NCBI RefSeq assembly: GCF_963853765.1
Contig: NC_088856.1
Coordinates: 53,878,001 to 53,942,000, forward strand
DNA length: 64,000 nt
DNA from: Magallana gigas
Lineage: Eukaryota
Direction of reading: 5' to 3'
The first letter of the stretch is position 1. Each line of letters opens with the position of its first letter. Made by a program: the position numbers and the translations under genes. Below, in pieces: positions 1,954-29,644 of this stretch. Under the pieces are notes generated by a model, which was given only the letters and a program-made list of their open reading frames with translations, searched no databases and was not told where the DNA came from.

Positions 1954-3077
1954 ATGCAAACTTTCGTATTTGTTGCTGTTGCCTTGTCCGTTGTCTGTTT
2001 GGCCGAAAGCAGGAACTACGGTCTTGCTGGAGGACTGGGGAGAACCAAAAACGCCACCCCAGAAACCCAGCGACTCGTGGACTCCGTGAGTAGTACATAT
2101 GGATAAAATATGAATTCGTATTCAAATCCCGACAAAGTTCTTATTTAAACCTCTTGCCCACATACAACGAACAAGGTAATTAAGAATTTACTGCTATTCC
2201 GAAGTAATTTTGAGACCCCGGTTGGCAAAACTTTAACGCATTTTATCATTGATATAATAAATATTTTTCATTGCTAATTTCATTGATGATAAATGGAATT
2301 TGAAGATGTATATATAAAATATTCAAATTTAAATATTATACAAAATTTGAAAAGAAAAAAGTTATAGACACTTTTTGTATATGACGGCAATATTGACTTT
2401 TATAACTTACGATAGTTTAAAGTACTGCCAGCTGATATTTTTGCTATATACGTATGACAAATTAGTGCTAAAATTTTGTATTTCCTATGGTTCCTTGAAA
2501 GTTCTATAAACGAGGTTTGTTGTAATATTATTGATGTAAATTCCAACTGATAGATAAAAATGAATTTCCTGTATTGTTACCGACAGGTGCGAGATGAGAT
2601 CATCGGTCAGCTTCCTCTGGGCTACGACAGGTAGCAGCCCTTACAGCTTACCGCCGTGTCATACAGAGAACAGGTTGTCGCTGGAAAGAACTACTTCATC
2701 AAGGTTTTCAAACGTGTTTTATATATTTTTCTGCAAGTTGCCAGATAGATATATATTATAGATTTTTTTTTTTCAACAAATATATGATTTATAGATTAAA
2801 TCAAAAGCCAAAACTCAAATTATAAAATTTCACACGTTCACTCTTTCTAGATGTATAAACTGTATAAATTAAGCTAATGATATATTAAACAAAACACCTC
2901 ATCATACTCAGTACACCATTTTGTCGTCTTGCCTCATTTCCGTCCAATATATTTCAGGTTGAGACCGGATTCAACAGATACATCCATGTCAGGATCTACA
3001 AAGACCTGAGAGGTGGTGCTTCCGTCACCACTGTCCAGTTAGAGAAGACTCTCTCTGACCCTATTGAATACTTCTAA
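1954..3077 (+). pseudogene. Secreted stefin-like cystatin copy 1 with an in-frame nonsense codon (exons 1954-2085, 2587-2703, 2958-3077)
   Basis: MQTFVFVAVALSVVCLA signal peptide, GG trunk, QVVAG, HVRIY and C-terminal DPIEYF; GT-AG phase-0 introns. TAG at 2632-2634 where copies 2-6 have GAG (Glu). AATAAA near 3122. Confidence 0.85.
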
Positions 3078-3403
3078 AAAAACGTGGATTAAAAATTATA
3101 CCCTTGATTATCTATACCGTAAATAAAATTAGACAACTACAGTTACAGCCTCTATTTGTTTATAAGGACTTTAAGCCATAAGTGCTCTTGGTCAAACATT
3201 TATCAGCAGTTTGATTTTGACCAGTTGTTCTAGAATGTTTTTAAAATGTATTAAAAATATTGCAACTAAATAATGTGAAAACACATTTAGACGGCATATT
3301 ATATAAACATTAAAACTAAAAGTCGAAGACTTCATTCAAGAAAGCAATTTATTATTTACATCTACATCTATCTATTAATTACTCGTTATCATTCTCTTTA
3401 AGA

Positions 3404-3820
3404 CATTCAGTAAAAATAAATAAACACTGCCTGTTTGGGAGGGTAACATTTGAAATAGACAGAAACCATTGACAATATGGTTTTTGAATAGGGTCAATTT
3501 CAACTGTTACCCTTCCAAATAGGCACTATTCGTATGATTATACCGAATGTGTTAATTTTAAAGTAAACTTTACTGTGTGTATTTTTAATCATTTATTTGC
3601 ATTATTTCAAACTCATAACTGACTTCTTTAGGATTGACGTGAATTCTTCGGCGAACCGTACGCACATAATTTACGGACATGTAACAATTCGTCGTAATAC
3701 CCGTTGCCAAGTATTTTGCTAGCGCCGAGGGTAATAGAACGGATCACAAACTGCGTCTAAACCAATCAGATTTCAGTATTTGATATTAGAGTATCATAAA
3801 ATTACATGACGTTGATTTGA
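3404..3820. mobile_element. Non-autonomous element with a subterminal long palindrome (3404-3548); boundaries approximate
   Basis: Arms tgcctgtttgggagggtaac...gttacccttccaaataggca; CCAAT-type motif (accaatcag) near the other end, as in related copies at 17.3, 22.2, 46.2 and 49.1 kb. Confidence 0.5.
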
Positions 3821-4490
3821 AAGTACATGTACTATTTTAATTTGTCATACAAAAATGTGTGTGTGGCATATTTTAGCAAATGTAACCGGCTGGCTGGTTA
3901 ATTTAATAAACTTTTATCTTATATAATCAATGCTTTTTTATCCATAGTCAAAGTATAACACTTAAAACGTAACAATTAAAATCATTAAAACCCTAAACAC
4001 AAATTCTTTCATTTTTCTTTTACAAATTTGCGCGCGTGCATGAATTTTGCCTGAGAGTAATTTGTTCTTATTTATCTATTCCAGTCATTTCCATCTCAAC
4101 AAATGTAGTAGTAGGTTACCCTGGGGATATATACTACAAGTCATGAATAGTAGTCTTAACGTTACATTATTTTCTAATTTGTATACAAAAACTATTATGA
4201 ATCAAAGTACTGAAGAACTGACGGGAGTTGATTTTGTCGATGTTTGTTTATCTTAAAATCAATGATATGTTATTTTGAATGACAAGCACATGTAGTTTCT
4301 AATTTGTATTTGAATTACACACATTTTTATAATATGATTGTTTGGACTTTTTCGACAAGAATGTCAAGAAACCCCCAAATGAATCATGGTAAATAATATT
4401 CATAGTAAAATTAATTCAATCAAACTATGTACGTATCAGTAATACAAAATATTTCTCTAAAATTGTATGGATGCAAGCAATATTGAACTC

Positions 4491-4579
4491 TAGTCTCGTT
4501 CAACCAAACACTCGGCTGACACCGTAAATCTCCGACAAGCATTTACAGAGACAGCCGAGCGTCGAGTTGAACGAGACTA
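4491..4579. mobile_element. 89-bp fold-back MITE with TAG...CTA termini
   Basis: tagtctcgttcaac ... gttgaacgagacta is a 14-bp perfect inverted repeat, with an inner ctcggctg/cagccgag pair. Confidence 0.65.
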
Positions 4580-4734
4580 TTAATATTGAACTCTGGCGTA
4601 GGAATACATACGACTACAAAAATATTTAAATTGTTCGTACCATTTAAAATCTGACTATTTTCAAGGTATTTATAAATAAGTTTCCTTGAAAAACAATTCT
4701 TTAGCATACATTACATCGAATTCATCAATCATTT

Positions 4735-7467: not shown

Positions 7468-8628
7468 ATGTATACCATTGTTTTTGTATTCCTTGCATTC
7501 TCTTGTACTTGTTTAGCGGACAATATTAGCTTTAGATATGGAGGACTGGGTGACCCCATGGACGCTACTTCAAAAACCCAGCGACTCGTGGATTCCGTAA
7601 GTATAGGTATTTTGGGGGTTGGGGGGGGGGGGGGCGGGCTTACCAATTATTTTATTTAATTTATTGTGAGAAAGTGATAGCATAGTTATAGCTTTTATAT
7701 TACCAACAGGTGCGGGATGATATCATTGATGAGCTCCCCTTGGGATACGATAGAGAGCAGTCTTTGCAGCTAAAAGCCGTCTCGTACAGAAAGCAATTAG
7801 TTTCAGGGTATAATTACTATAAAAAGGTAGGCAACACAATACAAGGTGTACTAAAACAGAGTTGTTTTTTACACAGCTTACGTGTTGTGTCTGTACCTCT
7901 AAACTAGATCGTATTTTTTTGTAGTAAGTGCCAATTAATTTGTTTTTATTTGTACTATCTTGCACACAGACCTATGTACATTAACATATATACACACACA
8001 TTTAGCAATGCTTTGGCTTTTATTAAGTGCCTTCAAAAGGAATGTAACAGAATGACTGGACAAGAACAGTTAATGAATTAAGCAAATTGATTTGACCGAA
8101 GTTAATTTTAGGAAAATAGAATGTCTTTTAACCTGTTCATTTAATGAAATATGCGTGAATGAAAATTCAGAACATGGAGTTAAAATAACTAACATATTAA
8201 CATATTAAAACCTTAAAACAGTAAATAACTAAAAACTATATTGTTTTCAAATCCAGATAGAATCACTGTATGTGACATACGTCTAAATATACTTAAGTAA
8301 AATGTTGTATTTTAATTTTCTTAAACTTATCTTTTAGCATTACTTTGTTGTTTTCTATATAAATTGGCATATATTTGCTACGGATATTCTCTTTAATGAA
8401 TATATTTTTGTAGATCTGATTGTAGAAGCAGTTTTTAAAATATGATTTTTTTTTCAATCCATTCTTTAGATCGAGACAAGCCAGGACAGATACATCCACG
8501 TAATAATTTACGAAGACTTCCGCAGCAATACTCTACTAACAGGCATGCAGCTAGGGAAATCCCTGTCTGACCCCATTGAATATTTCAGTTTAAACGTCGA
8601 TTTTGATACCTCAATATTTCGGCAATAA
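7468..8628 (+). CDS. Secreted stefin-like cystatin copy 2, 134 aa, divergent (exons 7468-7596, 7710-7826, 8470-8628)
   Basis: Signal MYTIVFVFLAFSCTCLA, YGG trunk, QLVSG first loop, YIHV, DPIEYF followed by the 13-aa extension SLNVDFDTSIFRQ; both introns GT-AG phase 0. Confidence 0.88.
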
Positions 8629-11960: not shown

Positions 11961-13333
11961 TATTCATTATAATAACCACAATTATCTCGATTAACTAACG
12001 CAGGATTTCAAGACGCAAAGACAAGGTAGGCTTTCCAAAAAAATATTGAAATGATAACATTCGATTTTTTTTACAAAAATAAAGAACGCAAACAAACATA
12101 TGAGGACCTAATTTTTCTAACCTTAGATATCCATCATGTATTTAATACTCTGATATTAATCTAAAGCATTTAGAGAAGAAAAGGATTTACCAATTTTCAA
12201 AAATATTATTGACTAAGCAGTCATTAATTAATAAAGATTGCAATTAGGTCTATGAGGACAAGAATTCTTTTTAAAATAAAAAGTGAATACTAAAATTACC
12301 GATAAATACTCTGGTGGAAAGGTGTATTTTATCATTAAAAATACAGGAACTATTGAAAATAAATTTTATACCGTCTTAAATTTTTAAGAATTAATTTTTA
12401 TAGAATAAAAACAAAGGAAGGGAACCCTTCAGGAAAAAGAAAAGGTCATTTATTAGGACACATTCCGCTCTTACATATTGGGACTTAAACGTGAAAATGT
12501 TGTCCAAGTATACTGAGTATTAAGCCCATACATGTCTGTTATGCATCCAGATTGATGGGTCGGACACCTTTATATTACATACATCGTATATTATTCTTAA
12601 TAAGTTTATCAGAAAAGTACAGAAATCATTCTTCAATTGCTAAATCATCTCTTAAAAGTGTTGACTGCCGGGAAGCTAATAAGATGAAATAAAATTTCTC
12701 TCTTCAATATCTGTATCTGTTTATGCTAAACATACGTATTTGCACTAAGAAGTTACTTTAATTAAAACTGAGGATTCATTAGAATTGGTCATTATATTCT
12801 GAAAAAAATCTTTCTCTTTGAAATTATGTGGTTAGATTAATTTAAAAAAAACACAAAGATTTATGTATAAATCAAAAGTTTCTTAAAAAGTAAACTTCAA
12901 ATCGTATTCTTACTGGATAAACTACAATTTCTTTTCACTGCTATTTATATACTAGTAGATTTATTTTTATTTTGAGTGTATAACTTTTCTTAATTAACCC
13001 CTTTTGATTATAAGTTAAGTTACAAAACAATAAGAATGCATTTAATGTATGCATGTTTACAAATACATCGAGTTCACAGAAGTAAAATGTTACATTTAGT
13101 TCCAACTACGCTTTAGGACATTATTATAAATGTACTATTAATTGGGTTATCATCATAAACTACTGATACAAACTGTAACATGCTTTTCTATGGACACACA
13201 TTTGGTGCTCTATACATTTAGAAATCACACACAACAGGTGGCCAGTGGCAAACAATACATCCATTGTTTCAACACTTGTATATAAGCGTCATTATTTCAT
13301 TGAGTCTGCACAAAGTCTTCAACATTGTAAAAC

Positions 13334-13986
13334 ATGCAGACCTTCGTATTTGTTGCTGTTGCCTTGTCCGTTGTCTGTTTGGCCGAAAGCAGGGGTCTTG
13401 CTGGAGGACTAGGTAGAACAAAAAACGCCACCCCACAAACCCAGCGACTCGTGGATTCCGTGAGTATTACATTTGGAAAGTTTAAATTTATTTACATCTT
13501 ATTTCTGTGAATATGTTATAATGAATTCCCTGTATTTAATTGTTACCGACAGGTGCAAGATGAGATAATTGGTCAGCTTCCTCTGGGCTACGACAGGGAG
13601 CAGCCCTTACAGCTTACCGCCGTGTCATACAGAGATCAGGTCGTCGCCGGAATGAACTACTTCATCAAGGTTGGCCAAAACATTTTCAACCATAATACTC
13701 TGCATATTGAATTAGAAAACTTTGTGGATTTTTTTTTTTTTGTTTTTTTTTTGTTTTGTTTTTTTTTGGCGTTTTATATTTAGCAATCTGTGTAAATGTG
13801 TAAAGTTAAATGAAACAATTGTTCGCTAATCCACCTACATACGTCATCAATTCCAATGTATTTTAGGTTGAGACCGGATTCAACAGATACATCCATGTCA
13901 GAATCTACAAAGACCTGAGAGGCGATGCTTCCGTCACCAGAGTACAGTTAGAAAAGACTCTCTCTGACCCTATTGAATACTTCTAA
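13334..13986 (+). CDS. Secreted stefin-like cystatin copy 3, 120 aa (exons 13334-13459, 13553-13669, 13867-13986)
   Basis: Signal peptide, GLAGG, QVVAGMNYFIK, VETGFNRYIHVRIYKDLRGDASVTRVQLEKTLSDPIEYF*; TATATAAG at 13279. Confidence 0.93.
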
Positions 13987-15509
13987 ACCAAATGTGTGGC
14001 TCATTTCGCTTTTATTTTTGTATATGCAGAAATCATCTTAACTCAAAATAAATATCTTTAAAAAAAAAAAGATGCTTTAATCGTGATATTTTAATCAACA
14101 TATTTTGGTAAAAAAAAATCAGTGTTAGGTCTATCATATTTTTATTTGAAAAAGCTAGTTTCCATCTGTTTGAATAAGAGGACTTGATATCTAATATGTA
14201 ATCAAGATTAATACCATCACAGTGCTTTATTGTTCACATTTTATTAGGAGGGGAGATAAAATACAAGCTCAGCTACATACATTTTGAAATAAAATGAAAC
14301 GAAAATGACATGTTGCATTAAGAATCATCGGAAACATATATTCCATAAAGTCTTGTAATCGCAGCAAAAGCGGAGAGTCTTTTCGAGACTAGTGTTCATT
14401 TGATGTACCGTATATCCGGTATTTTTGAAGATTATCTATTTTTTGTATTATTTTCTATAAGAAACTTTTAAAATCGCAAAAATTGACTGACGCAAATAAA
14501 AAATGCTACATAGTTTCCCCCATTTTCGCGAATTTTGTGACACGCGAAAAAAACGGTTATATATACAGTATATCTAAAATCCCATGTTGTTTTCACAACA
14601 AATATAATACCGAGCGCAGCGAGAGGCGGGCGAAGCCTGCCTCGCGAAACGAGGATTAATGGTAACACGTATATATAGGAAAATCAGTGAAAAATGAATG
14701 TTGAATCAGGGGTACTAAGGCCAAAAAGAAGTTTCTTCCAGCCCTGGGTGCCGCCATATTGGCAGCCATTTTGTTTTTAAAAAGTTAGTTCGATCATTGA
14801 TTGACTGGTATTTTTCGATGTTTATTGCCCCTAAACTCGTTTAAATAAGTTCCAGTGTTTCAATAGAAGTGAATTTGAATTAAAAGAAATTAAAACGGAA
14901 ACCAGATAAGTTTCAATAGTGCTTCAGTCAAGAAACACGACTTGTTCTTTGTATGTCTTATCAAATTATCAGATGAAAAATAAAAACATTTACGTCAAGG
15001 AACTGATCTTTTAGATACTGAACAAAGTATGCAATTTTATTACAGCGGCATTCATATGAATTAAATTGATGAACAATAAAAGAAGAAATAAAACAAATTG
15101 GAATCACGTAATTGTCTTCGGCTATTTCCGAAGACAAAACTTGAACGTTTTACGTCTGAAATATGACGTCATAATGTAGACTGAGCACGCGACGTTTAGT
15201 TTAACTTTGACGAATGGTATGAGTAGGCAACCATGCAGGTGGATCCTACTGTGTGTGTTTTAAATAGATTTTATATTACAAAAATCAAACTGCACTGTGT
15301 TAAATCTGCGCTCGGTCCAACGGTCCCACCGTTTACATATTAAATCTCAAAAAAGGTTTGAATGTCATCTCCATCATTGCTGGAACATCTATATTTTTAA
15401 TGCCTCGTAATTTATATATGTATGGATAACTTTAACTCCGAAATAATATATGACTATGACAAGCAATTTTGAGACTTCAAAATATACGGACGTTAATGTA
15501 TAACCTTAT

Positions 15510-16182
15510 GGTGGCATACTTCTGCCCCTTGTGTGCAAGTTTTTTTTTTCATTAAATATGTCGACATGCAAGATAAATATGTTAACATGAAACATAAATA
15601 TGTCAACATGCAACATAAATATTTCGACATATGTTATAATTTTTTTTTAAAAACTGTCTTTAGGCTTCGTTACATAGGCCCAATACGTTGCATTTCTGTA
15701 TTGAGCTTTCTTTGTTAGGTGTCTATTTTAGAAACAAATGCGATTTGTTCTAAAGCTATTGAGAGCATACTAGTTTAGTGGAAAATAGGTGAAATACTAA
15801 ATAGTTTCATGATTTTATGACACAGAGTTTTAAAGTAAGTTGGTACGGGACATCTCCATGTTGTGACGTACTTCCTATCGAAATAAACAATGAAAACATC
15901 TATAATTCTATAATTTCTTTTTTTACCAATAAATTTGCATAACTGCGTAGCGCAAAAGGTGAAAGCGTTATTACGATTCTGTAAGTCATGAGTTCGAATC
16001 CCGCTTGGGTTTTTGAATTCTAAACCTGTCCAAAACTTTAAAAATCTTAACATGTCAAAACAATCTAAAAACAGATTTGTCAAATATCGCAAAATTTGAA
16101 AATGCTACACCGCTGCAGTGAAAGTAATTTGATTATGATTAACTTTAAAACATATTGATATCGACAGGTGTCCCATGCCACC
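15510..16182. mobile_element. Kolobok-type MITE with 21-bp internal repeats and a tRNA-like cassette
   Basis: Ends ggtggcat / atgccacc, flanks TTAT/TTAA; (taaatatgtcaacatgcaaca)-type repeats at 15555-15630; B-box gagttcgaatccc at 15990-16002 followed by T5. Confidence 0.6.
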
Positions 16183-17334
16183 TTAAAATAATGTATTTCA
16201 ATTCATCGATATCTTTAATTTGTAATAGAAGCCAATTTAGTATAAAAAAAAAAAAAACCAAAAAGTTGAAAATATCATGTTGCTTTTTCGTTTACCTATG
16301 ATACAAAAGGAATTTTTTGTCAAATGATAAAAACAGAAATTGTATGATGAACATAAAACTTAAAACCAATGATCTGGTGTTGTAAATTTTTATCGAATGT
16401 ATTTAACGATCCTGAAGATATGTCTTGTGGAATCTAAAAAGTAAATAATAAAAAATACATAGAAGTAGTCTTTTTTCTTAATCTCCAATCGTTTTAAATA
16501 TCTAAGAAATGAGTGTGTGGTCATATCTAATGCATAAACATGTCAATTTTTTAAATTTTTAAGTATTGTAAATTTATATGCGTGTCATGCTTATTGATTG
16601 ATAATACATGTAAATGTGCAAATGCTTGTAGGCGTATTGAATAAATGATTGTTTTCTTTACAAAAAAAAATTCTATATGTTCGCTTTTTTGGATATAAAA
16701 TATTACGTGGTTTTCATAACTTAAATTGCTTAAAGTCATATCAATACATTAACACAAACACGAGCGGATCATTCTTTAACAAATTATACAATTTTTATAT
16801 ATTTTCTTTAGAATCGATATTCAGAGATGATATAATCTATAGTTTTATATCAAATATGTGATGATGTTCGATGCTAACTGCCAGCAATGCACTAAATGTA
16901 TTTCACATAGAATTCTTGTCACGTGTCAAGTATACTGAGTATTAAGCCCATACATGTCTGTTATGCATCCAGATTGATGGGTCGGACACCTTTATATTAC
17001 ATACATTGTATATTATTCTTAATAAGTTTATCAGAAAAGTACAGAAATCATTCTTCAATTGCTTAATCATCTCTTAAAAGTGTTGACTGTCGGGAAGCTA
17101 ATTAGATGAAATAAAATTTCTCTCTATTCAATATTTGTATCTGTTAATGTTAAACATACGTATTTGCACTAAGAAGTTACTTTAATTAAAAATGAGGATT
17201 TATTAGAATTGGTCATTATATTCTAAAAAAAATATTTCTCTTTGAATTTATGTGAAGTTAGATTAATTCTTAAATAAAACACAAAGATTTATGTATAAAT
17301 CAAAAATTTCTTTAAAAGTTACCTTCAAATCGTA

Positions 17335-18463
17335 ATCATTTAAGTTTTATTCGTTTGATGAGATATCGGCGCTTCTGATTGGTCGAAACATTTCTTTAAT
17401 ACCTGTATCAATAAAATTTTAGCCGGATCTATTTTTCTCATATGTTCTGATTTAACACTATTTATAGTTCGGGAATTTCACAAATAAACACTGTCATCAA
17501 AATGTAAAGTTGTGTCTGTTTTATTGTCAGCAAACAAAATACAACTTTATAAACATAAAAACTTGAAAGTTTAACCTTCAAAAATAAACAAAACACATTA
17601 TTTGATTCACGAAATAGAAAATTAAGCGTCTTCTCACGATTTCGTCTGCTTGAGTTCAATCAACATTTACAGCGAGGCTGGCTGTTCCTTTTCCAGGAAT
17701 ATTAAAACGAACATAAAGGCCTAAACACTTTCACGGTAACACTGCTGTTTAAATTTGGTAACGATAATTTTTAAATTTACACACGTACATGATCGGTCAT
17801 CAGAATAAGCATCGTAAAGAAAAACTATGATCAATGCATCAACTCCTTCGGCGCATTCCAAGGGGCAGATATACCATTTAAGTACATCACTGGCTATCTA
17901 GTTATCATAACGTTTACAAAAGTCGCTTATACATACTATTCTTTGTCGACATATCAACTATCTTCGTCTACGATCGCCACTCCGTAGATGGCAAAGTCCA
18001 GATGCATATTCCAGCGATCTCACACGAAAACTAGTTTTATTACGAGTTTTTCTGCACAGTGAATAATATCATAAGCTATCGCATGTATTTTCCTTTCGTT
18101 TTCAATTCAGCCGGTTCAAATTTTAACTCACTATTTGTGTTTAATCCAATAAATTCAGCTCAATACCTCTGCATCAGCTGAAGGCGCATCCATTTTGAAT
18201 ATTGTTGCTGTTGTTGCTTTGTATTCATACGCGCCGCTTCATTTACATTATTTACATTTTTGATCAATGACACTTCACATTTTTTTATTTGAAAATGTTT
18301 TAATAAATGATAAGAAATGAAGATAATCATTTTTCTATTGATCGACGTATCAAAGAAATAATTGACCGGAAACATCAATGCACGTAGCGCATTGATGAAG
18401 TTTTCCGGTCAGTTTTTTCTTTGATACGTCGATCAATAGAAAAATTATTATCTTCATTTCTTA
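17335..18463. mobile_element. 1.13-kb non-autonomous element with a terminal 150-bp palindrome (18311-18463)
   Basis: Absent from unit 1 (empty site aaatcgta|ttcttactgg at 12906/12907), which defines the ends; a second copy is at 22212-23332. Confidence 0.8.
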
Positions 18464-18901
18464 ATTCTTACTGGTTAAACTACAAGTTTTATTTCACCGC
18501 TCTTTATATACTAGTAGATTTTTTTTATTTTGCGTGTGTAACTTTTCTTAATTAACTTTTTTTGATTTGAAGTTAAGTTACAAAACAATAAGAATGCATT
18601 TAATGTATGCATGTTTGCAAATACATCGAGTTCACAGAAGTACAATGTTACATTTAGTTCCAACTACATGTACGCTTTAAGACACTATTATAAATATACT
18701 TGTACTGTTAATTTGTTATCATCATAAACTACGGATACAGACTGTAACACGTTTTTCTATGGACACACATTTGGTGCTCTTTACATTTAGAAATCACACA
18801 CAACAGGTGGCCAGTGGCAAACAATACATCCATTGTTTCAACACTTGTATATAAGCGTCATTATTTCATTGAGTCTGCACAAAGTCTTCAACATTGTAAA
18901 C

Positions 18902-19596
18902 ATGCAGACCTTCGTATTTGTTGCTGTTGCCTTCTCCGTTGCCTGTTTAGTCCAAAGCAGGAACTACGGTCTTGCTGGAGGACTGGGGAGAACTAAAAAC
19001 GCCACCCCACAAACCCAGCGACTCGTGAACTCCGTGAGTATTACATTTGGAAAGTTTAAATTTCTTTACATCTTATTTCTGTGAATATGTTATAATGAGA
19101 TCCCTGTATTGATGCCGACAGGTGCAAGATGAGATTATTGGTCAGCTCCCTCTGGGGTACGACAGGGAGCAACCCTTACAGCTAACCGCCGTGTCATACA
19201 AAGAACAGGTCGTCGCCGGAGTGAACTACTTCATCAAGGTTGGCCAAAACATTTTCAACCATAATATTCTGCATATTAATAACTTTGAATTGGAAAACTT
19301 AGATATTTTGGCGTTTTATATTAAGTAATCTGTATATTACTTTAAACAAATGAAAAAGACCTAAACTCACACTGAAAATCAGCTTTCGTCGTTAAAGAAT
19401 GTATATGTGTAAAGTTAAATGAAACAATTGTTCGCTAATCCACCTATATACGTCATCAATTCCAATGTTTTTTTAGGTTGAGACCGGATTCAACAGATAC
19501 ATCCATGTCAGGATCTACAAAGACCTGAGAGGCGATCCTTCCGTCACCAGAGTACAGTTAGAGAAGACTCTCTCTGACCCTATTGAATACTTCTAA
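18902..19596 (+). CDS. Secreted stefin-like cystatin copy 4, 122 aa (exons 18902-19033, 19122-19238, 19477-19596)
   Basis: MQTFVFVAVAFSVACLVQSRNYGLAGG..., QVVAGVNYFIK, DLRGDPSVTRVQ...DPIEYF*; TATATAAG at 18848. Confidence 0.93.
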
Positions 19597-20385
19597 ACAA
19601 AATGTGTGGCTCGTTATGCTTTTATTTTTGTATATGCGGAAATCATCTTAACTCAAAATAAATATCTTTTACAAAAAAAAGATGCTTTAATCGTGATATT
19701 TTAATCAACATATTTTGGTAAAAAAAAAAAAATCAGTGTTAGGTCTATCATATTTTTATCTGAAAAAGCGAGTTTCCATCTGTTAGAATAAGAGAACTTG
19801 ATATCTATAAGTAATCAAGATTAATACTGTCACAGTGCTTTATTGTTCACATTTTTTTAGGAAGGGAGATAAAATACAAGTTCAGTTACATACATTTTGA
19901 AATAAATGAAACAAAAATGACATGTTGCATTAAGGATCTATAGGAAACCAATGTTCCATAAAGTCTTGTAATCGCAGCAAAAGCGGACAGTCTTTTCGAG
20001 CCTGGTGTTCATTTGATGTACCGTATATCCGGTATTTCTGGCGATTATTTATTTTCTGTATTATTTTCCATAAGAAACTTTTAAAATCGCAAAAATGACT
20101 GACGCAAATTAAAAATGCTACATAATTTCCCCCATTTTCGTGAATTTAGTGACACGCGAAAAAAAAACGTTTATATATACGGTATATTTAAAATCCCATG
20201 TTGTTTGCACAACAAATTACATAATAAATCTCAAAAAGGGTTTGAATGTCATCTTCATCATTGCTGGAACATCTTTTTTTAATGCCTCGTAATATTTATA
20301 TGTATGGGTGACTCCGAAATAAAATATGACTATGACAAGCAATTTTGAGACTTCAAAATATGCAGACGTTAATGTATAACATTAT

Positions 20386-21060
20386 GGTGGCATACTTCTG
20401 CCCCTTGTGTGCAAGTTATTTTTTCATTAAATATGTCGACATGCAAGATAAATATGTTAACATGAAACATAGATATGTCAACATTCAACATAAATATTTT
20501 GACGTGTTAAAATTAAAAAAAAAATGTCTTTAGGTTTCGTTACATAAGCCCAACACGTTGCATTCCTGTATTGAGCTTTCTTCGTTAGGTGTCTATTTTA
20601 GAAAAAAAAAATGGGATCTGTACTGAAGCTATCAAGAGCATGCTAGTTTAGTGGAAAATATGTCAATACTAAATAGTTTCATGATTTTATGACACAGAGT
20701 TTTAAATTAAGTTGGTACGGGACACCTCCATATTGTGGCGTTCTTCCTATCGAAATAAACAATGAAAACATGTATATTTCTTTAATTTCTATTTTTACCG
20801 ATATATTTGCATAACTGCGTAGCGCAATAGGTGAGAGCGTTATTGCGATTCTGTAAGTCATGAGTTCGAATCCTGCTTGGGCTTTTAAAATCTTAACCTG
20901 TCCAAAACTTTTAAAATCTTAACATCATGATGTCAAAACAATTTAAAAACAGATTGGTCAATTATCGCAAAATTTGAAAATGCTAAACTGGTAGGGTGGG
21001 AGTAATTTGATTATGATTAACTTTAAAACATATTGATATCGACAGGTGTCCCATGCCACC
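20386..21060. mobile_element. Duplicated copy of the Kolobok-type MITE at 15510
   Basis: Same ends (ttat|ggtggcat ... atgccacc|ttaa) at the same position in unit 2. Confidence 0.65.
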
Positions 21061-22211
21061 TTAAAATAATGTATTTCAATTCATCGATATCTTTAATTCG
21101 TAATAGAAGCCAATTTAGTAAATAAAAAAAGGGAAAATATCATGTGGCTTTTTCGTTTACCTAGAATACTAACAGAATTTTTTGTCAAATGATAAAAACA
21201 GAAATTGTATGATGAACATAAAACTTAAAACCAATGATCTGGTGTTGTGAATTTTTATCGAATGTATTTAATGATCATGAAGATAAGTTTTGAGGAATCT
21301 TAAAAAGTAAATTAAAACACCATGCATGGAAGTAGTCTTTTTTCTTAATTAATTTCCAATCGTTTTAAATATTTAAAAAATGAGTGTGTGGTCATATCTA
21401 ATACATAAACATGTCAATTTTTAAATTTTTAACCATTGTACATTTATATGCGTTTAATGTTTATTGATTGATAATACATGCAAATGTGCAAATGCTAGTA
21501 GGCGTATTGAATATATGTTTATTTTCTTAACCAAAAAAAATTCTATATGTTCCCTTTTTTGTATATAAAATATTACGTGCTTTTCATAACTTAAATTGCT
21601 AAAAGTCATATCAATACATTAACACAAACACGAGCGGATCATTCTTTAACAAAAGATGCAAACTTTATATATATTTTTTAAAATCGATATTCAGAGACGA
21701 TATAATCTATAGTTTTATATCAAATATCTGATGATGTTCGATACGAACTGCCAGCAATGCACTACATGTATTTCACATAGAATTCTTGTCACGTGTCAAG
21801 TATACTGAGTATACTATATTAAGCCCATACATGTCTGTTATGCATCCAGATTGATGGGTCGGACACCTTTATATTACATACATTGTATATTATTCTTAAT
21901 AAGTTTATCAGAAAAATACAAAAATCATTCTTCAATTGCTTAATCATCTCTTAAAAGTGTTGACTGTCGGGAAGCTAATTAGATGAAATAAAATTTCTCT
22001 CTATTCAATATTTGTATCTGTTAATGTTAAACATACGTATTTGCACTAAGAAGTTACTTTAATTAAAAATGAGGATTTATTAGAATTGGTCATTATATTC
22101 TGAAAAAAATCTTTCTCTTCGAAATTATGTGAAGTTAGATTAATTTTTAAATAAAACACAAAGATTTATGTATAAATCAAAAATTTCTTAAAAAGTTACC
22201 TTCAAATAGTA

Positions 22212-23332
22212 ATCATTTAAGTTTTATTCGTTTGATGAGATATCGGCGCTTCTGATTGGTCGAAAAATTTCTTTGATACCTGTATCAATAAAATTTTAGC
22301 CGGATCTATTTTTCTCATATGTTCTGATTTAACACTATTTATAGAACGGGAATTTCCAAAATAAACACTGTCATCAAAATGTAAAGTTGTGTCTGTTTTA
22401 TTGTCAGCAAACAAAATACAACTTTATAAACATAAAAACTTCAAAGTTTAACCTTCAAAAATAAACAAAACACATTATTTGATTCACGAAATAGAAAATT
22501 AAGCATCTTCTAACGATTTCGTCTGCTTGAGTTCAATCAACATTTACAGCGAGGCTGGCTGTTCCTTTTCCATGAATATTAAAACGAACATATAGGCCTA
22601 AACACTTTCACGGTAACACTGCTGTTTAAATTTGGTAACGATAATTTTTAAATTTACACACGTACATGATCGGTCATCAGAATAAGCATCGTAAAGAAAA
22701 GCTATGATCAATGCATCAACTCCTTCGGCGCATTCCAAGGGGCAGATATACCATTTAAGTACATCACTGGCTATCTAGTTATCACAACGTTTACAAAAGT
22801 CGCTTATACATACTATTCTTTGTCGACATATCAACTATCTTCGTCTACGATCGCCACTCCGTAGATGGCAAAGTCCAGATGCATATTCCAGCAATCTCAC
22901 ACGAAAACTAGTTTTAATACGAGTTTTTCTGCACAGTGAATAATATCACAAGCTATCGGATGTATTTTCCTTTCGTTTTCAATTCAGCCGGTTCAAATTT
23001 TAACTCACTATTTGTGTTTAATCCAATAAATTCAGCTCAATGCCTCTGCATCAGCTGAAGGCGCATCCATTTTGAATATTGTTGCTGTTGTTGTTTTGTA
23101 TTCATACGCGCCGCTTCATTTACATTATTTACATTTTTGATCAATGACACTTCACATTTTTTTATTTGAAAATGTTTTAATAAATGATAAGAAATGAAGA
23201 TAATAATTTTTCTATTGATCGACGTATCAAAGAAATAATTGACCGGAAAACATCAATGCATTGATGAAGTTTTCCGGTCAGTTTTTTCTTTGATACGTCG
23301 ATCAATAGAAAAACTATTATCTTCATTTCTTA
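22212..23332. mobile_element. Second copy of the palindrome-ended element
   Basis: Colinear with 17335-18463; palindrome at 23188-23332 with its apex deleted (catcaatgcattgatg). Confidence 0.8.
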
Positions 23333-23763
23333 TTCTTACTGGTTAAACTACATGTTTTATTTCATCGCTATTTATATACTAGTAGATTTATTTTTATTTT
23401 GCGTGTGTAACTTTTCTTATTTAACTTTTTTTGATTATAAGTTAAGTTACAAAACAATAAGAATGCATTTAATTTATGCATGTTTACAAATACATCGAGT
23501 TCACAGAAGTAAAATGTTACATTTAGTTCCAGCTACATGTACGCTTTGAGACATTATTATAAATATACTTGTACTGTACTGTTAATTTGGTATCATCATA
23601 AACTGTAACACGTTTTTCTATGGACACACATTTGGTGCTCTATACATTTAGAAATCACACACAACAGGTGGCCAGTGGCAAACAATACATCCATTGTTTC
23701 AACACTTCTATATAAGCGTCGTTATTTCATCGAGTCTGCACAAAGTCTTCAACATTGTAAAAC

Positions 23764-24408
23764 ATGCAGACCTTCGTATTTGTTGCTGTTGCCTTGTCCG
23801 TTGTCTGTTTGGCCGAAAGCAGGAGGGATGGACTCGCTGGAGGACTAGGTAGAACAAAACACGCCACCCCACAAACCCAGCGACTCGTGGACTCAGTGAG
23901 TATTACATTTGGAAAGTTTAAATTTCTTTACATCTTATTTCTGTGAATATATTGTAATGAATTCCCTGTATTGCTGCCGACAGTTGCGAGATGAGATTAT
24001 TGGTCAGCTTCCTCTGGGGTACGACAGAGAGCAGCCACTACAGCTTACCGCTGTGTCATACAGAGAACAGGTCGTCGCCGGAATGAACTACTTCATCAAG
24101 GTTGGCCAAAACATTTTTTTTTGGCGTTTCATATTTAGTAATCTGTTCATTACTTAAAACAAATGAAAAAGACCTAAACTCACACTGAAAAACAGCTTTC
24201 GTCGTTAAAGAATGTAAATGTGTAAAGTTAAATGAAACAATTGTTCGCTAATCCACCTACATACGTCATCAATTCCAATGTATTTCAGGTTGAGACCGGA
24301 TTCAACAGATACATCCACGTCAGGATCTACAAAGACCTGAGAGGTGGTGCTTCCGTCACCAGTGTCCAGTTAGAGAAGACTCTCTCTGACCCTATTGAAT
24401 ACTTCTAA
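23764..24408 (+). CDS. Secreted stefin-like cystatin copy 5, 122 aa (exons 23764-23895, 23984-24100, 24289-24408)
   Basis: ...CLAESRRDGLAGGLGRTKHATP..., QVVAGMNYFIK, DLRGGASVTSVQ...DPIEYF*; TATATAAG at 23709. Confidence 0.93.
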
Positions 24409-25184
24409 ACAAAATGTGTGGCTCATTTCGCTTTTATTTTTGTATATGCAGAAATCATCTTAACTCAAAATAAATATCTTTAAAAAAGATGCTTTTATCG
24501 TTATATTTTAATCAACATATTTTGTAAAAAAAAAAAATTGTTAGGTCTATCATAATTTTATCTGAAAAAGCGAGTTTCCAACTATGTGAATAAGAGGACT
24601 TGATTTCTAATATGTAATCAAGCTTAATACCATCACAATGCTTTATTGTTCACATTTTATTAGAAGGGGAGATAAAATACAAGTTCAGCTACAGACGTTT
24701 TGAAAAAAATGAAACAAAAATGACATATTGCATTAAGGATCTAGGAATTCAATGTTCCATAAAGTCCTATAATCGCAGCAAAAGCGGATAGTCTTTTCGA
24801 GCCTGGTGTTCATTTGATGTACCGTATATCCGGTATTTCTGGCGATTATCTATTTTCTGTATTTATTTCTATAAGAAACTATAAAAATCGCAAAAAAATG
24901 ACGGACGCAAATTAAAAATGCTACATAGTTTCCCCCATTTTCGCGAATTTAGTGAAACGCAGTTATATATACGGTATATCTAAAATCCCATGTTGTTTTT
25001 ACAACAAATATCATAATAAATCTCAAAAAAAGTTTGAATGTCATCTTCATCATCGCTGGAACATCTATTTTTTAATGCCTCGTAATTTTGATATGTATGG
25101 GTGACTTTAACTCCGAAATAAAATATGACTATGACAAGCAATTTTGAAAATTCAAAATATGCAGCCGTTAATGAATAACCTTAC

Positions 25185-25541
25185 TGATAAAGTTGGTACG
25201 GGACACCTCCATTTTGTGACGTACTTCCTATCGAAGTAAAGTTTAACAATGAAAACATGTATAATTCTATAATTTCTTTTTTTACCAATAAATTTGCATA
25301 ACTGCGTAGCGCAATAGGTGAGAGCGTTATTACGATTCTGTAAGTCATGAGTTCGAATCCTGCTTGGGCTTTTAAAATCTTAACCTCTCCAAAACTTTTA
25401 AAATCTAAACATGTCAAAACAATTTCAAAACAGATTGGTCAAATATCGCAAAAATTAAAAATGCTAAACCGGTGCAGTGAAAGTAATTTGATTATGATTA
25501 ACTTTAAAACATATTGATATCGACAGGTGTCCCATGCCACC
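25185..25541. mobile_element. 5'-deleted copy of the Kolobok-type MITE in unit 3
   Basis: Retains agttggtacgggacacc...gagttcgaatcc...atgccacc|ttaa; about 320 bp at the left end are missing relative to 15510. Confidence 0.6.
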
Positions 25542-25639
25542 TTAAAATAATATATTTCAATTCATCGATATCTTTAATTCGTAATAGAAGCCAATTTAGT
25601 AAAAAAAAAATAAAAATTGCAACTGCACATGAAGAGTGT

Positions 25640-25965: not shown

Positions 25966-28562
25966 TCCATATATGATGAACATAAAACTTAAAACCAATG
26001 ATCTGGTGTTGTGAATTTTTATCGAATGTATTTAACGATTCTGAAGATATGTTTTGTGGAATCTAGAAAAGTAAATAAAAAAAACATGCATTGAAGTAGT
26101 CTTTTTTCTTAATCTTCAATCGTTTTAAATATTTAAAAAATGAGTGTGTGGTCATATTTAATACATAAACATATCAATTTTTAAACTTTTAACCATTGTA
26201 CATGCTTATTGATTGATAATACATGTAAATGTGCAAATGCTTGTAGGCGTATTGAATATATGTTTATTTTCTTTGCAAAAAAACAACAACATTTCTTTAT
26301 GTTCGCTTTTTTTGTGGTATATAAAATATTACAGTACGTGGTTTTCATAACTTAAATTGCTAAAAGTCATATCAATACATTACCACAAACACAAGTTATA
26401 ATGGTTATAAGGCTATAAGATTGTCCTATCCTTAATTTATACATACAGATATTCATTCTACATGTATATATTTTAAATCCAAATTGCTGACTATATCCGT
26501 TTAAGATGGCTGGATTGCTATGGCCATTTTCAGACTATATTCATATTCTAACGAGAAAGAGCTCTAAATAAAAGATGTAAGATTTTAAAGCTAAAGATAT
26601 ATATATTTTTTCTTTACTTGATAACAGTTTATGGTAGTCCTATACTCGGCACTGAATGGGCTCAATCATTAAAAGCTTAGCTTTAAATGATAAATATACA
26701 TTCTAGCAATACATATACAAAAGAAAATACGCATGTTTACATGCTAGTTTGTTTGTTATCACCTCTCAGACGGGTGTACCCCGTCCGTTTTTCCTAAAAA
26801 TAGTTACCAATTTTGGGAAAATTAGAACTGAACATACAAAATAGAGTATAAATATTTATTTAAGCCATATCTCATCAATAATTTTGCGCAAATTTTTGTA
26901 AGTAAGTACGCTTTATGGACCTGATGTATCAAAATAGAATACAAAAAATGCAATGCTAGTATCGCGTTTGGTAATTTTTTTACTATTTTATGGACTCAAA
27001 CTTTAATTCATGGTGTTTATTCTATAGATTGACATCGTAGAACAAAGATTTGGTAAAATAAATTATATGTTGACGGATTACTTTTCACGCTATAAGCTCT
27101 AAACCAAGTAGACCCTGACGAAAAAATCCGTAAAAATCACATTTTGCCACAGTTTTCTGCCTAGATCTGTCAACAATGTTAGATATCATTTAAACATTAA
27201 TTAATTGACGATTGATTAAATTCGAAATAGCGTCTGTCTCTTAATTTAAACCGGTTTTAGTAAAAGAAAAAGAAAATTTCGGGGGGGGGGGGGGGGGCAT
27301 CAAAACAAAGAAGATATAAGCAAACCTGAGATCCTGGTTAATCAGAAACTTCGTTTTTCATTTTACTTTAACACAATCGAGTTTCTCAACATTAATCATT
27401 TCTATCTCTCATAGAATATATTATATTACCGTTCTAATCGCTTATTATTGCCATAGTTTACAACAGCGATGTAGAGCAAAATCAATACCGGGTATCTAAA
27501 ACGCTTTGTAAAAGTCGAACCAATATTGTAAAATCCGTATTATGACGTAGTGCGATACTCGGACTACTTTAATTCTTATAAAATCATACCTAAGCATTCA
27601 TAAGGTACGTGTGATTGCTAATTTGCAGACCACACAGCAGGTCTCTTAATAACCGAGACTTGACGAGTGCAGTTATAGTTATTTGATAACATCATAAATA
27701 TAAACACTTTAAGGCAATGAATAATTATATAACTCAACGATCTACAACGAGCGTATCATTCTTTAACAAAAGATACAATTTTATATATATTTTTTAAAAT
27801 CGATATTCAGAGACGATATAATCCATGGTTTTATATCAAATATCTGATGATGTTCGATGCGAACTGCCAGTAATGCACTAATACACATGGGTATATCCCT
27901 CTTACTATTTTTAGAATCGATAGGACAACAAAGTAGTGCCTTTAAGCTATACTTGCAGAGAGTATGTACATTTATTTGGACATTTTAAACCAGAATGCTT
28001 GACACATGTCAGAAAAGGGGATTTGCAATTTTAAAAACAAGTGTCAAAATTGAATTATGATTTGAAAAAAAAGAATTGAAATAGTTTGATGTACACCCTT
28101 TCCAAAACTGAGAAATTCCCTAATTTTTCTTTCATTTTCAGAGTTTTTCAATACAGACGCATTTTGCCGGAAAACGAATCTGACTTCAAACCACGAAATT
28201 TTAACATGAAAGAGACAATTTGATGAGCTTTCATTCAAGAGGTCCCTCGAATGAATCCTTACGTTAACATTACCGCCTATGGAAAATGCATTAGTGGACC
28301 CTACCCACATAGAATTCTTGTCACGTGTCATTTTTGACAATAATTTTGCTATTTTCTATTGAAATGATGCATAACCACACTTATTAGGTTTACGATCATT
28401 TTCTGTAATATAAGCATCAATCAGTTTTTCATTCATTACTGGGCAGATGGCGCGGTCATTTTGCAACATATGCTCTATCCATGTATATCAAAGGTGTTAC
28501 GTTTAATACCTTACTATAAATAGAAGAGCGGTTTGTTTCAAGTGCACACCGACCTTTACACA

Positions 28563-28697
28563 ATGAACGCCGTGGTTCTACTGATTGCTGGGATGTCTGT
28601 CTGTGTGTCTGTACGAGCAGACGACACATACGTAGTTGGCGGGCTTGGTCCCACCAAGTTTGCCACCGAGGAGGTCCAGGACCTTGTCGACTTGGTA

Positions 28698-28746
<49 letters not shown>

Positions 28747-29644
28747 TGTTTTCTTTTACGTATCCTCACTTTCATCCTATTTTTCATTCTCTTTTTAAAT
28801 TAATTTTCAAGAACAACATGTAGATCTGCATGTGTGCGTTTAATTTAATTGATTTACTAATTAGAAATGTATTGCTTGGACAGTTGTTGAAATATGCAAC
28901 AAATTGATACACCCACTGCTGAGATATGTTTTTCTCTACAAGTTTTATTTTTCAAATAATTTTATTTAATCGGTCTAAAAATCTATGTTTTATTTATTGT
29001 ATTCACTTTGCCTGCTAAATAGACAAAATATCAATTATAATATATTTCAACTCACAGCTTCGAGAAGAAATTATTAGCGAGCTCCCCCTGGGGTACGACC
29101 AGGAGAAACCTCTCCCAGAATTCACCGCGCGCTTATACAGGGAACAGGTCGTCGCGGGAACAAACTTCTTTGTTAAGGTGAGTACATTCAGAAATCAACT
29201 AATATTCATGAGTAAGACATTCAATTTTNNNNNNNNNNNNNNNNNNNNNNNNNNNNNNNNNNNNNNNNNNNNNNNNNNNNNNNNNNNNNNNNNNNNNNNN
29301 NNNNNNNNNNNNNNNNNNNNNNNNNNNNNNNNNNNNNNNNNNNNNNNNNNNNNNNNNNNNNNNNNNNTCTTTGATTTTTTTTCCTGTATCAAATTACACA
29401 AATAATTTCATATGTTCTGCTTTTTTATGATGTAAAGCAATAAATGTGTTCCCAATTATATTAGATGCAAGATCAATTATAGTTTAAATAGTGGAAAAAC
29501 TGTAAATTACAAATTGAATTGCAGGTAGAGACTGGACCACTTCGATTCATTCACGTGAGAATTCACGCCGATCTCACGGGTGAGGCTCACGTGGTTGAGG
29601 TGCAGATTGGAAAAACAATGGGAGATTCATTGGAGTATTTCTAG
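28563..29644 (+). CDS. Secreted stefin-like cystatin copy 6, 123 aa, most divergent (exons 28563-28694, 29058-29177, 29525-29644)
   Basis: Signal MNAVVLLIAGMSVCVSVRA, VVGG trunk, QVVAGTNFFVK, FIHVRIHADLTGEAHVVEVQIGKTMGDSLEYF*; TATAAATA at 28515; N-gap in intron 2. Confidence 0.9.
28707..28740. repeat. (CT)n microsatellite in intron 1 of stefin copy 6
   Basis: Direct read. Confidence 0.95.
29229..29367. other. Assembly gap (139 N)
   Basis: Run of N. Confidence 1.

What the first reader, a model, noticed from the sequence alone, without database searches (positions are those of the whole stretch)
1954..29644. Tandem array of six secreted, disulfide-free stefin-type cystatins
Seen: six same-strand genes with the stefin signature (trunk G, QxVxG, H-x-R/I-I-Y, C-terminal D-x-(I/L)-E-Y-F) and two phase-0 introns. 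Each has a 17-19-aa hydrophobic signal peptide fused into exon 1 and no Cys in the mature chain. Established: vertebrate type 1 cystatins (CSTA/CSTB) have introns after codons 22 and 56, positions these genes match, but they are cytosolic and lack leaders. Secreted cystatins are normally the disulfide-bonded type 2, though signal-peptide stefins have been reported sporadically (e.g. in trematodes). Inference: a lineage-specific, expanding extracellular anti-cysteine-protease repertoire, e.g. mucus or haemolymph defence against pathogen or parasite cathepsin-like proteases. This is the best candidate system in the window.
Basis: partly seen in the sequence, partly recalled or inferred. Interest (0 to 1): 0.78.

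Follow-up and report, generated by a model that had tools for sequence, protein, structure and literature searches.

The report
Oyster array of leader-bearing stefin genes
The Pacific oyster carries a tandem cluster of small cysteine-protease-inhibitor genes of the normally cytosolic "stefin" type that have each gained a secretion leader; the genes are real and already annotated, but this secreted classical-stefin architecture is missing from the cystatin literature I could search.

Summary
The window is Magallana (Crassostrea) gigas, contig C4. It carries six same-strand, three-exon stefin-type genes with GT..AG phase-0 introns at the two conserved stefin positions. Each has a 17-19 aa hydrophobic leader in exon 1 and no Cys after it.

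Corrections:
- Gene 1 has an in-frame TAG (2632-2634) in this assembly.
- Gene 2 carries a conserved 13-aa C-terminal tail.
- The array continues upstream of the window, giving about 12 loci, two of them on the minus strand.
- The assembly gap lies inside intron 2 of gene 6 and interrupts no coding sequence.

The products of genes 4, 5 and 6 are identical to RefSeq proteins named cystatin-A3-like and cystatin-A2. Sequence and predicted fold match stefins, not type 2 cystatins. All oyster leader-bearing stefins form one well-supported clade, apart from the oyster's classical leaderless stefin. dN/dS of 0.11-0.27 indicates purifying, not diversifying, selection. One spliced RNA-derived contig shows the leader inside gene 6's transcript.

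The best reading is secretory-pathway cysteine-protease inhibitors. An extracellular role in shell matrix or defence is plausible from published proteomics and transcriptomics, but I did not test it. I rate this a new variant of a known kind, of moderate interest.

The parts
1954..3077 (+). g1: stefin-type gene, exons 1954-2085 / 2587-2703 / 2958-3077. It is broken in this assembly.
   Evidence: dN/dS against g3-g5 is 0.11-0.27, so the inactivation is recent or is an allele.
2632..2634 (+). In-frame TAG in g1 exon 2. The paralogues have GAG (Glu of LGYDREQ) at this codon.
   Evidence: reported as '1 TAG'.
7468..8628 (+). g2: divergent paralogue, exons 7468-7596 / 7710-7826 / 8470-8628. It has QLVSG and a 13-aa tail (SLNVDFDTSIFRQ) after EYF. 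A GT follows the SLN codons at 8596.
   Evidence: The nearest annotated protein is P0128 (134 aa, 124/134 identical).
13334..13986 (+). g3: exons 13334-13459 / 13553-13669 / 13867-13986. Product of 120 aa.
   Evidence: Exon 2 hits Pfam Cystatin and stefin B residues 20-56.
18902..19596 (+). g4: exons 18902-19033 / 19122-19238 / 19477-19596. Product of 122 aa.
   Evidence: The spliced product is identical to P0142 (XP_065939063.1, cystatin-A3-like).
23764..24408 (+). g5: exons 23764-23895 / 23984-24100 / 24289-24408. Product of 122 aa.
   Evidence: The spliced product is identical to P0143 (XP_065939064.1).
28563..29644 (+). g6: oldest paralogue in the window, exons 28563-28694 / 29058-29177 / 29525-29644. 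Product of 123 aa.
   Evidence: The product is identical to P0024 (XP_011421190.2, cystatin-A2). A spliced contig in run X15 joins exon 1 to exon 2 and starts 19 nt upstream of the ATG (table 8, record 7).
29229..29367 (.). Assembly gap, inside intron 2 of g6.
   Evidence: The donor at 29178 and the acceptor at 29524 both lie outside the gap.
12501..25616 (+). Young tandem duplication units carrying g3, g4 and g5. Units are about 4.9-5.5 kb and 90-93% identical through both genes and spacers.
   Evidence: Self-BLAST.

Best explanation
These are paralogous genes for classical-type stefins (type 1 cystatins, MEROPS I25A) in which exon 1 has been extended at its 5' end to encode a cleavable signal peptide.

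Proposed mechanism, mostly inferred:
- The protein enters the ER and the leader is removed after residue 17-19.
- An 11-13.6 kDa inhibitor without cysteines leaves by the secretory pathway.
- It blocks papain-like cysteine proteases with the usual tripartite wedge: an N-terminal trunk ending in Gly-Gly, the QxVxG hairpin, and a second hairpin with the conserved Leu.

Shown here:
- the gene models, and their identity to annotated proteins;
- stefin sequence, stefin fold and stefin intron positions;
- the absence of Cys after the leader;
- purifying selection;
- a single oyster-wide origin of the leader-bearing clade, followed by recent tandem duplication in M. gigas;
- a spliced transcript of g6 that contains the leader.

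Inferred only: cleavage, secretion, inhibitory activity, and the site of action (shell matrix, haemolymph or mucus, acting against pathogen or endogenous proteases).
For: - Gene models. The spliced g4, g5 and g6 products equal RefSeq proteins.
- Stefin membership by sequence: all PDB hits with E<=1e-5 are stefins, starting at residue 24-27 of the query and residue 2-8 of the chain. No type 2 cystatin appears at E<=1. Exon 2 alone hits stefin B residues 20-56.
- Stefin membership by fold: the AF2 model has pLDDT 87 for the domain and about 58-60 for residues 1-20. Foldseek's top hits are Dictyostelium cystatin A2, human stefin B and A, and CsStefin-1, with TMt 0.76-0.85. Cystatin C and chicken cystatin have TMt about 0.4.
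- Leader: an h-region of 15-17 uncharged residues with mean Kyte-Doolittle 2.1-2.7, and A/S/V at -3/-1. QxVxG sits at residue 65-77 in leader-bearing proteins against about 46 in classical stefins. Maximum N-terminal hydropathy is >=2.6 against <1.6.
- No in-frame Met lies between the leader's ATG and the GG trunk, so the leader must be translated if the trunk is.
- Transcript: an X15 contig runs 28544-28693 | 29057-29179 with intron 1 removed.
- Selection: dN/dS 0.11-0.27.
- Clade: 97/96 support for all 25 oyster leader-bearing stefins.
- Literature: a cystatin A2 was found in C. gigas nacre soluble matrix. Cystatin A/A2 is up-regulated in hemocytes of Vibrio-challenged and surviving oysters. 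The consecutively numbered cystatin gene models CGI_10013713/15/17 are tied to larval shell formation.
Against: - No signal-peptide predictor was available. Cleavage and secretion are heuristic.
- The n-region carries no positive charge.
- Two polyA RNA runs, sampled at about 1%, gave no reads on g5 or g6, so expression level and tissue are unknown.
- The published nacre and hemocyte 'cystatin A2' entries could not be mapped to a particular gene of this array.
- The Pro of the stefin second-loop Leu-Pro pair is replaced (LR, LT, LS, FR), so potency and specificity may differ.
- One copy (g1) is broken.
Confidence: 0.72

Rival explanations
1. The leader sends the inhibitors into the secretory or endolysosomal system, and their targets are the oyster's own cathepsins. 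Candidates are digestive-gland lysosomes, the digestive lumen, or tissue and shell-matrix remodelling. The array would then be housekeeping regulation of endogenous proteolysis, not anti-pathogen defence.
For: - Selection is purifying, not diversifying.
- Three old subfamilies are conserved across Ostrea, Saccostrea and Crassostrea.
- The consecutively numbered cystatin gene models CGI_10013713/15/17 are linked to larval shell formation.
- A cystatin is present in nacre matrix.
Against: - Cystatin A/A2 is up-regulated in Vibrio-challenged hemocytes and belongs to a survival signature.
- Nothing here separates endogenous from exogenous targets.
Confidence: 0.2
2. The hydrophobic N-terminus is an uncleaved signal-anchor. 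The stefin domain would then be displayed on a membrane (type II orientation) and not released.
For: - The n-region lacks charge.
- The h-region reaches 15-17 residues.
Against: - The h-region is shorter than a typical membrane span.
- It is followed by a polar c-region with small -3/-1 residues in all paralogues and orthologues.
- A soluble cystatin A2 was recovered from nacre water-soluble matrix.
Confidence: 0.05
3. Some copies are decaying duplicates without function, and the array is mostly neutral copy-number variation.
For: - g1 carries a TAG.
- Upstream loci uB and uC are broken.
- Database alleles differ between assemblies.
- No raw reads fell on g5 or g6.
Against: - dN/dS is well below 1 for every intact pair, and also for g1.
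- Frames, splice sites and motifs are intact in nine loci.
- Orthologues are kept in five oyster species.
Confidence: 0.03

Closest known systems
Classical stefins (type 1 cystatins: human stefin A/B, Dictyostelium cystatin A2; MEROPS I25A)
   Same: - Domain of about 100 aa, N-terminal Gly-Gly trunk and QxVxG loop.
- C-terminal D/E-x-L/I-x-Y-F motif.
- No disulfides.
- Two phase-0 introns at the equivalents of codons 22 and 56.
- Best sequence and fold matches.
   Different: - An N-terminal leader of 17-19 aa, plus 4-8 extra trunk residues.
- A 5-6 residue insertion (LPLGYDRE) between the helix and strand 2.
- The second-loop Pro is replaced.
- Many tandem copies, whereas stefins are reported as single or few copy (PMC2784779).
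Cystatin-like stefins (CyL-stefins; FhCyLS-2 of Fasciola hepatica, myxozoan Smolstatin)
   Same: A stefin-like body with an obligatory signal peptide. Secretion has been shown experimentally for FhCyLS-2 (PMC9986714).
   Different: - CyL-stefins lack the C-terminal D/E-x-L-x-Y/H-F motif, usually have two disulfides, and are reported only from parasitic flukes and myxozoans.
- The oyster proteins keep the motif, have no Cys, and come from a free-living animal.
- Smolstatin is only a weak sequence hit (E 0.015, against 1e-11 for stefins).
Type 2 cystatins (cystatin C, chicken egg-white cystatin, tick sialostatins)
   Same: Signal peptide, and a secreted single-domain cysteine-protease inhibitor with a QxVxG loop.
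   Different: - Type 2 cystatins have two disulfides, a PW second loop and a central insertion. None of these is present here.
- No sequence hit at E<=1, and fold TMt only about 0.4.
Leader-bearing stefin-like proteins elsewhere in databases (Mytilus californianus cystatin-A2-like P0051; tardigrade Paramacrobiotus P0028; unnamed P0031, P0083)
   Same: A hydrophobic N-terminal extension before the GG trunk and a stefin-type C-terminus.
   Different: - They are not resolved as sisters of the oyster clade.
- They are single sequences, and their gene structures were not examined here.

Membership tests
Type 1 cystatin / stefin (I25A) | Single cystatin domain closest in sequence to stefins A/B | tested here: met
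   all PDB hits down to E 8e-6 are stefins. Pfam PF00031 is above its cut-off for P0005, P0003 and P0004, and just below it (21.2 against 22.2 bits) for P0024.
Type 1 cystatin / stefin (I25A) | Stefin fold: one helix packed on a five-stranded sheet, without the type 2 insertion | tested here: met
   TMt 0.83-0.85 to 8gqq, 1stf_I and 5zc1. This is a predicted model, not a solved structure.
Type 1 cystatin / stefin (I25A) | Conserved N-terminal Gly and QxVxG first hairpin | tested here: met
   G26, G27, Q74, V76 and G78 are invariant across 50 sequences.
Type 1 cystatin / stefin (I25A) | Second hairpin Leu-Pro pair | tested here: inconclusive
   Leu is nearly invariant, but Pro is replaced by R, T or S (g2 has F-R).
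Type 1 cystatin / stefin (I25A) | No disulfide bonds | tested here: met
   zero Cys after the leader in all six genes.
Type 1 cystatin / stefin (I25A) | C-terminal D/E-x-L/I-x-Y/H-F motif | tested here: met
   DPIEYF or DSLEYF in all six. In g2 the motif is followed by 13 more residues.
Type 1 cystatin / stefin (I25A) | Two conserved intron positions | tested here: met
   Conservation of the two stefin introns in animals is stated in PMC7913475. The human codon numbers 22 and 56 are from my own knowledge.
Type 1 cystatin / stefin (I25A) | No signal peptide; cytosolic | tested here: not met
   a hydrophobic leader is present in every copy. This is why I file the genes as a variant and not as plain members.
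Type 1 cystatin / stefin (I25A) | Tight-binding inhibition of papain-like proteases | not testable with these tools
   Needs recombinant protein and Ki measurements.
Cystatin-like stefins (CyLS) | Obligatory signal peptide | tested here: met
   (heuristic only; no SignalP).
Cystatin-like stefins (CyLS) | Loss of the classical C-terminal motif | tested here: not met
   The motif is retained. The definition is in PMC9986714.
Cystatin-like stefins (CyLS) | Typically two disulfides | tested here: not met
Type 2 cystatins (I25B) | Two conserved disulfides, PW second loop, central insertion | tested here: not met
   No type 2 sequence hit, and fold matches are weak.

The most novel reading that the evidence does not exclude
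Oysters carry a third cystatin architecture that superfamily reviews do not list: classical stefins that keep the C-terminal motif, the conserved introns and the lack of disulfides, and that gained a cleavable signal peptide once, before the Ostrea/Saccostrea/Crassostrea split. The gain would be by 5' extension of exon 1 and independent of the fluke and myxozoan CyL-stefins. The family then expanded into a cluster of about 12 loci. Neighbouring members may also be spliced together, from a GT just after the DTN/SLN codons in the exon 3 tail of uD or g2 to exon 2 of the next gene. That would give a secreted two-domain stefin of about 22 kDa, which may be the nacre 'cystatin A2'.
Probability: 0.4. 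Interest if true: 0.55.

Novelty: new variant of a known kind. Interest (0 to 1): 0.42.

Why it matters
Stefins are the textbook cytosolic, single-copy branch of the cystatin superfamily. Reviews state that signal-peptide stefins occur only in parasitic flukes and myxozoans, and only in an atypical form.

A free-living bivalve with a conserved, expanded clade of otherwise classical stefins sent into the secretory pathway would show that this switch of compartment happened more than once and without disulfide stabilisation.

It would also give named candidates for three published observations in a major aquaculture species:
- the cysteine-protease inhibitory activity and 'cystatin A2' reported from oyster shell matrix;
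- hemocyte signatures of survival after Vibrio infection;
- larval shell formation under acidification.

The practical value is modest, because the genes are already annotated.

Tried and rejected
- Type 2 cystatin membership: rejected.
- CyL-stefin membership: rejected on the C-terminal motif and on Cys content.
- Diversifying selection across paralogues: not seen at whole-gene level. Site-wise tests were not run because there are too few sites.
- Raw-read RNA support for g5 and g6: none in X21 or X22, with about 1% of each run read. This does not show silence. The heavy read pile at 26608-28299 comes from a dispersed high-copy repeat, not from a gene of the array.
- The look-up of encoding contigs for P0003 and P0024: nothing on record.
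- Rfam scan of 1-31000: no hit.
- The search of earlier findings by place and by words: nothing.
- Paper searches for cystatin-A3 with oyster, for UniProt and CGI identifiers, and for parasite terms: little beyond the papers cited.
- Not run: the large representative-protein search, complex prediction, and a second fold. No claim here rests on them.
Spliced models were searched exon by exon by reference. Full-length analyses used database proteins identical to the spliced products (P0024, P0142, P0143) or close alleles. Joined products of g1-g3 and of the upstream loci were assembled only inside scripts for local comparison.
Full report
**Origin of the window**
The window is contig C4:53878001-53942000 of a 564-Mb, 29-contig assembly. 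Database proteins identical to its products are from Magallana (Crassostrea) gigas. DNA runs that hold the stretch are labelled oyster.

**Observation**
A motif scan of all six frames, followed by inspection of the DNA, finds six + strand genes of three exons each. The coordinates are under 'parts'.
- All twelve introns are phase 0 with GT..AG ends.
- Exon 1 encodes Met, a 15-17 residue uncharged stretch, a short polar segment, and then GGLG..AT(P/S/E)..Q.LVD(S/L).
- Exon 2 encodes ..LPLGYD(R/Q)E..QxVxG.N(Y/F)(F/Y).K.
- Exon 3 encodes (V/I)ET....(Y/F)IHV.I(Y/H)....D.(I/L)EYF.
- After a candidate cleavage site at residue 17 or 19 there is no Cys. Mature masses are 11.2-13.6 kDa and pI ranges from 4.6 to 9.3.

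- g1 has TAG at 2632-2634 where its paralogues have GAG.
- g2 continues for 13 residues after EYF.
- The array does not stop at the window edge (next section).

**The gap**
The gap at 29229-29367 is inside intron 2 of g6. It begins 51 nt after the exon 2 donor and ends 157 nt before the exon 3 acceptor, so no reading frame crosses it. The three-exon product equals RefSeq XP_011421190.2 and is one residue from K1RFZ1 of the independent 2012 assembly. That supports both flanks belonging to one gene.

**Extent of the array**
Exon-wise searches of the whole genome and reading of 68 kb upstream show further loci, all within about 67 kb:
- uA at C4:53853386-53854069: intact, identical to P0005 (cystatin-A3).
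- uB at about 53857212: stops in exons 2 and 3.
- uC at about 53865927: an exon 2 fragment with a stop.
- uD at about 53871130-53871797: intact, g2-like, with the same kind of C-terminal tail.
- m1 and m2: two minus-strand genes at 53848168-53851452 and 53840278-53842055, both with leaders.

No further copy lies downstream of g6. The only other stefin-like locus found is at C4:2074966-2075250(-). These counts are lower bounds.

**What the genes are**
- Sequence. Exon 2 alone finds human stefin B residues 20-56. The full g6 product (P0024) finds only type 1 cystatins in the PDB, with E from 1.6e-11 to 8e-6. The alignments begin at query residue 24-27 and chain residue 2-8, so the first ~23 residues have no counterpart. 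No type 2 cystatin appears at E<=1.
- Fold. An AlphaFold2 model built on a 50-sequence alignment has pLDDT 87. Residues 1-20 are at about 58-60 and unstructured, followed by a helix and four long strands. Foldseek ranks Dictyostelium cystatin A2, the stefin B chain of its papain complex (1stf_I), CsStefin-1 and stefin A first (TMt 0.76-0.85). Cystatin C, chicken cystatin and tick cystatins follow at about 0.4.
- Intron positions. The introns correspond to stefin A/B residues 22|23 and 56|57. Conservation of two intron positions in animal stefins is reported in PMC7913475.
- Conclusion. The body is a classical stefin. The one defining feature it fails is the absence of a signal peptide.

**The leader**
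Across 123 retrieved relatives the pattern is bimodal.
- Classical stefins have QxVxG at about residue 46 and maximal N-terminal hydropathy below 1.6.
- The oyster proteins, and a few others (Mytilus californianus, a tardigrade, two unnamed sequences), have QxVxG at residue 65-77 and hydropathy of 2.6 or more.

All orthologues from Saccostrea cucullata, S. echinata, Ostrea edulis, Crassostrea virginica and C. angulata carry the leader. No in-frame Met lies between the leader's ATG and the GG trunk, so a functional N-terminal trunk requires translating the leader.

Run X15 holds a 521-nt contig that lies on 28544-28693 and then directly on 29057-29179. Intron 1 of g6 is removed, and the contig starts 19 nt upstream of the ATG. 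The 1-2 nt offsets at both junctions are explained by identical bases on either side (table 8). This is the only direct transcript evidence I obtained. The two raw polyA runs gave no reads on g5 or g6 at about 1% sampling. No signal-peptide predictor was available.

**Evolution**
- A maximum-likelihood tree of 43 stefin domains, with leaders trimmed, places all 25 oyster leader-bearing proteins in one clade on a long stem (97/96).
- Inside that clade are old subfamilies shared by genera. One holds g6 with C. virginica and Saccostrea proteins (100/99). Another holds m1 and m2 with C. virginica, O. edulis and Saccostrea proteins (100/99).
- An M. gigas group holds uA, g2+uD, and g1/g3/g4/g5.
- The young copies sit in units of 4.9-5.5 kb that are 90-93% identical through genes and spacers.
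- Pairwise dN/dS is 0.11-0.27 for all pairs, g1 included. The proteins are constrained, and the g1 stop is recent or allelic.
- An intact exon 2 that shares g1's distinguishing Lys (AGKNYFIK) exists in proteins from other assemblies (P0001, P0009).
- The locus at C4:2.07 Mb encodes a classical stefin: RCGG trunk, LP pair, and 45-51% identity to Pomacea, Lingula and vertebrate stefins. It lies in one open frame without either conserved intron, and it groups with the Pomacea stefin. So the oyster also keeps a classical-type copy in whose domain exon no hydrophobic leader is seen; its start exon was not found.

**Mechanism**
The best-supported reading is a set of secretory-pathway cysteine-protease inhibitors.
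- The Gly-Gly trunk, the QxVxG loop and the second-loop Leu are kept. The Pro of the Leu-Pro pair is not.
- The mature N-terminus would carry 4-8 residues before Gly-Gly, more like cystatin C than stefin A. That comparison is from my own knowledge.
- g1, g3, g4 and uA have an N-A-T sequon just after the trunk, and g2 has N-I-S. Glycosylation is possible but untested.
- Where the proteins act is inference. Published work reports a 'cystatin A2' in C. gigas nacre water-soluble matrix (PMC3361287). It also reports cystatin A/A2 transcripts raised in hemocytes after Vibrio challenge and in a survival signature (PMC3150398, PMC3418554). Three consecutively numbered cystatin gene models were tied to larval shell formation (PMC5824581).
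- None of these could be mapped to a specific gene here.

**Comparison with known kinds**
- Against classical stefins, the differences are the leader, a 5-6 residue insertion before strand 2, the altered second loop, and the copy number.
- CyL-stefins (PMC9986714) share the signal peptide. By their definition they lack the C-terminal motif and usually have two disulfides, and they were found only in flukes and myxozoans. The oyster proteins fail both sequence criteria.
- Reviews state that signal-peptide stefins in animals are exclusive to those parasites, and that metazoan stefins lack signal peptides and are single or few copy.
- I found no paper in the searchable library that describes leader-bearing classical stefins in molluscs. 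Subscription journals are not covered.
- The genes themselves are annotated in RefSeq and UniProt under automatic names.

**A lead I could not finish**
- In uD and g2 a GT follows the DTN/SLN codons in the exon 3 tail, in phase 0.
- Two annotated proteins join exactly that point to an exon 2 of g1 type: K1R803 (196 aa, 22.5 kDa) and C. angulata XP_052679452.1 (203 aa, 21.4 kDa without its leader). Each is a two-domain stefin.
- The nacre paper reports that its cystatin A2 ran at 22 kDa and that the EST predicted the same mass.
- This fits read-through splicing between neighbouring array members. It may instead be an annotation artefact.

**Verdict**
The stefin and leader parts of the interpretation are supported. 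The defence role and the idea of an 'expanding' repertoire are not shown. I rate it a new variant of a known kind, of moderate interest.

Noticed in passing
upstream of the window: G000 C4:53840278-53871797 (loci L001-L004): The stefin array continues upstream. On the + strand there are uA (intact), uB (stops in exons 2 and 3), uC (an exon 2 fragment) and uD (intact, with a g2-like tail). On the minus strand there are two leader-bearing genes, m1 and m2. Together with the window this makes about 12 loci in about 67 kb.
   Followed up: yes
G000 C4:2074966-2075250 (-), locus L008:966-1250: A classical stefin (RCGG trunk, LP pair) lies in one open frame without either of the two conserved stefin introns. 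The frame contains no ATG, so the start is probably in a small upstream exon. It may be a retrogene-like copy. It groups with the Pomacea stefin, not with the array.
   Followed up: partly
window 8593-8598 (g2) and C4:53871765-53871770 (uD): A GT lies directly after the SLN/DTN codons in the exon 3 tail. Annotated two-domain proteins (K1R803, and C. angulata XP_052679452.1) join this point to exon 2 of the next gene. This may be read-through splicing that gives a secreted two-domain stefin of about 22 kDa, the mass reported for nacre cystatin A2.
   Followed up: partly
window 26608-28299: This is a dispersed high-copy repeat with at least 470 candidate copies, often in tandem with periods of about 2.6-3.1 kb on other contigs. 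It draws very deep RNA-run coverage with many loose ends, and the reads are mostly 95-99% alike, so they come from other copies.
   Followed up: partly
window 51683-52693 (-): A 336-aa ORF begins with an ETS DNA-binding domain of the ELK/TCF type (LWQFLLELL...GEFKL...[10 protein letters not shown]). The family is judged by eye only.
   Followed up: no
window 31002-31562 (-): A 186-aa ORF rich in Lys and Glu that looks like a coiled coil. A mirror ORF lies on the + strand.
   Followed up: no
window 56773-56906: A second assembly gap, outside the finding.
   Followed up: no
window 28695-28757 (intron 1 of g6): A (CT/TC)n simple repeat starts directly after the g6 exon 1 donor. The reads tool flagged reads as cut there.
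   Followed up: no
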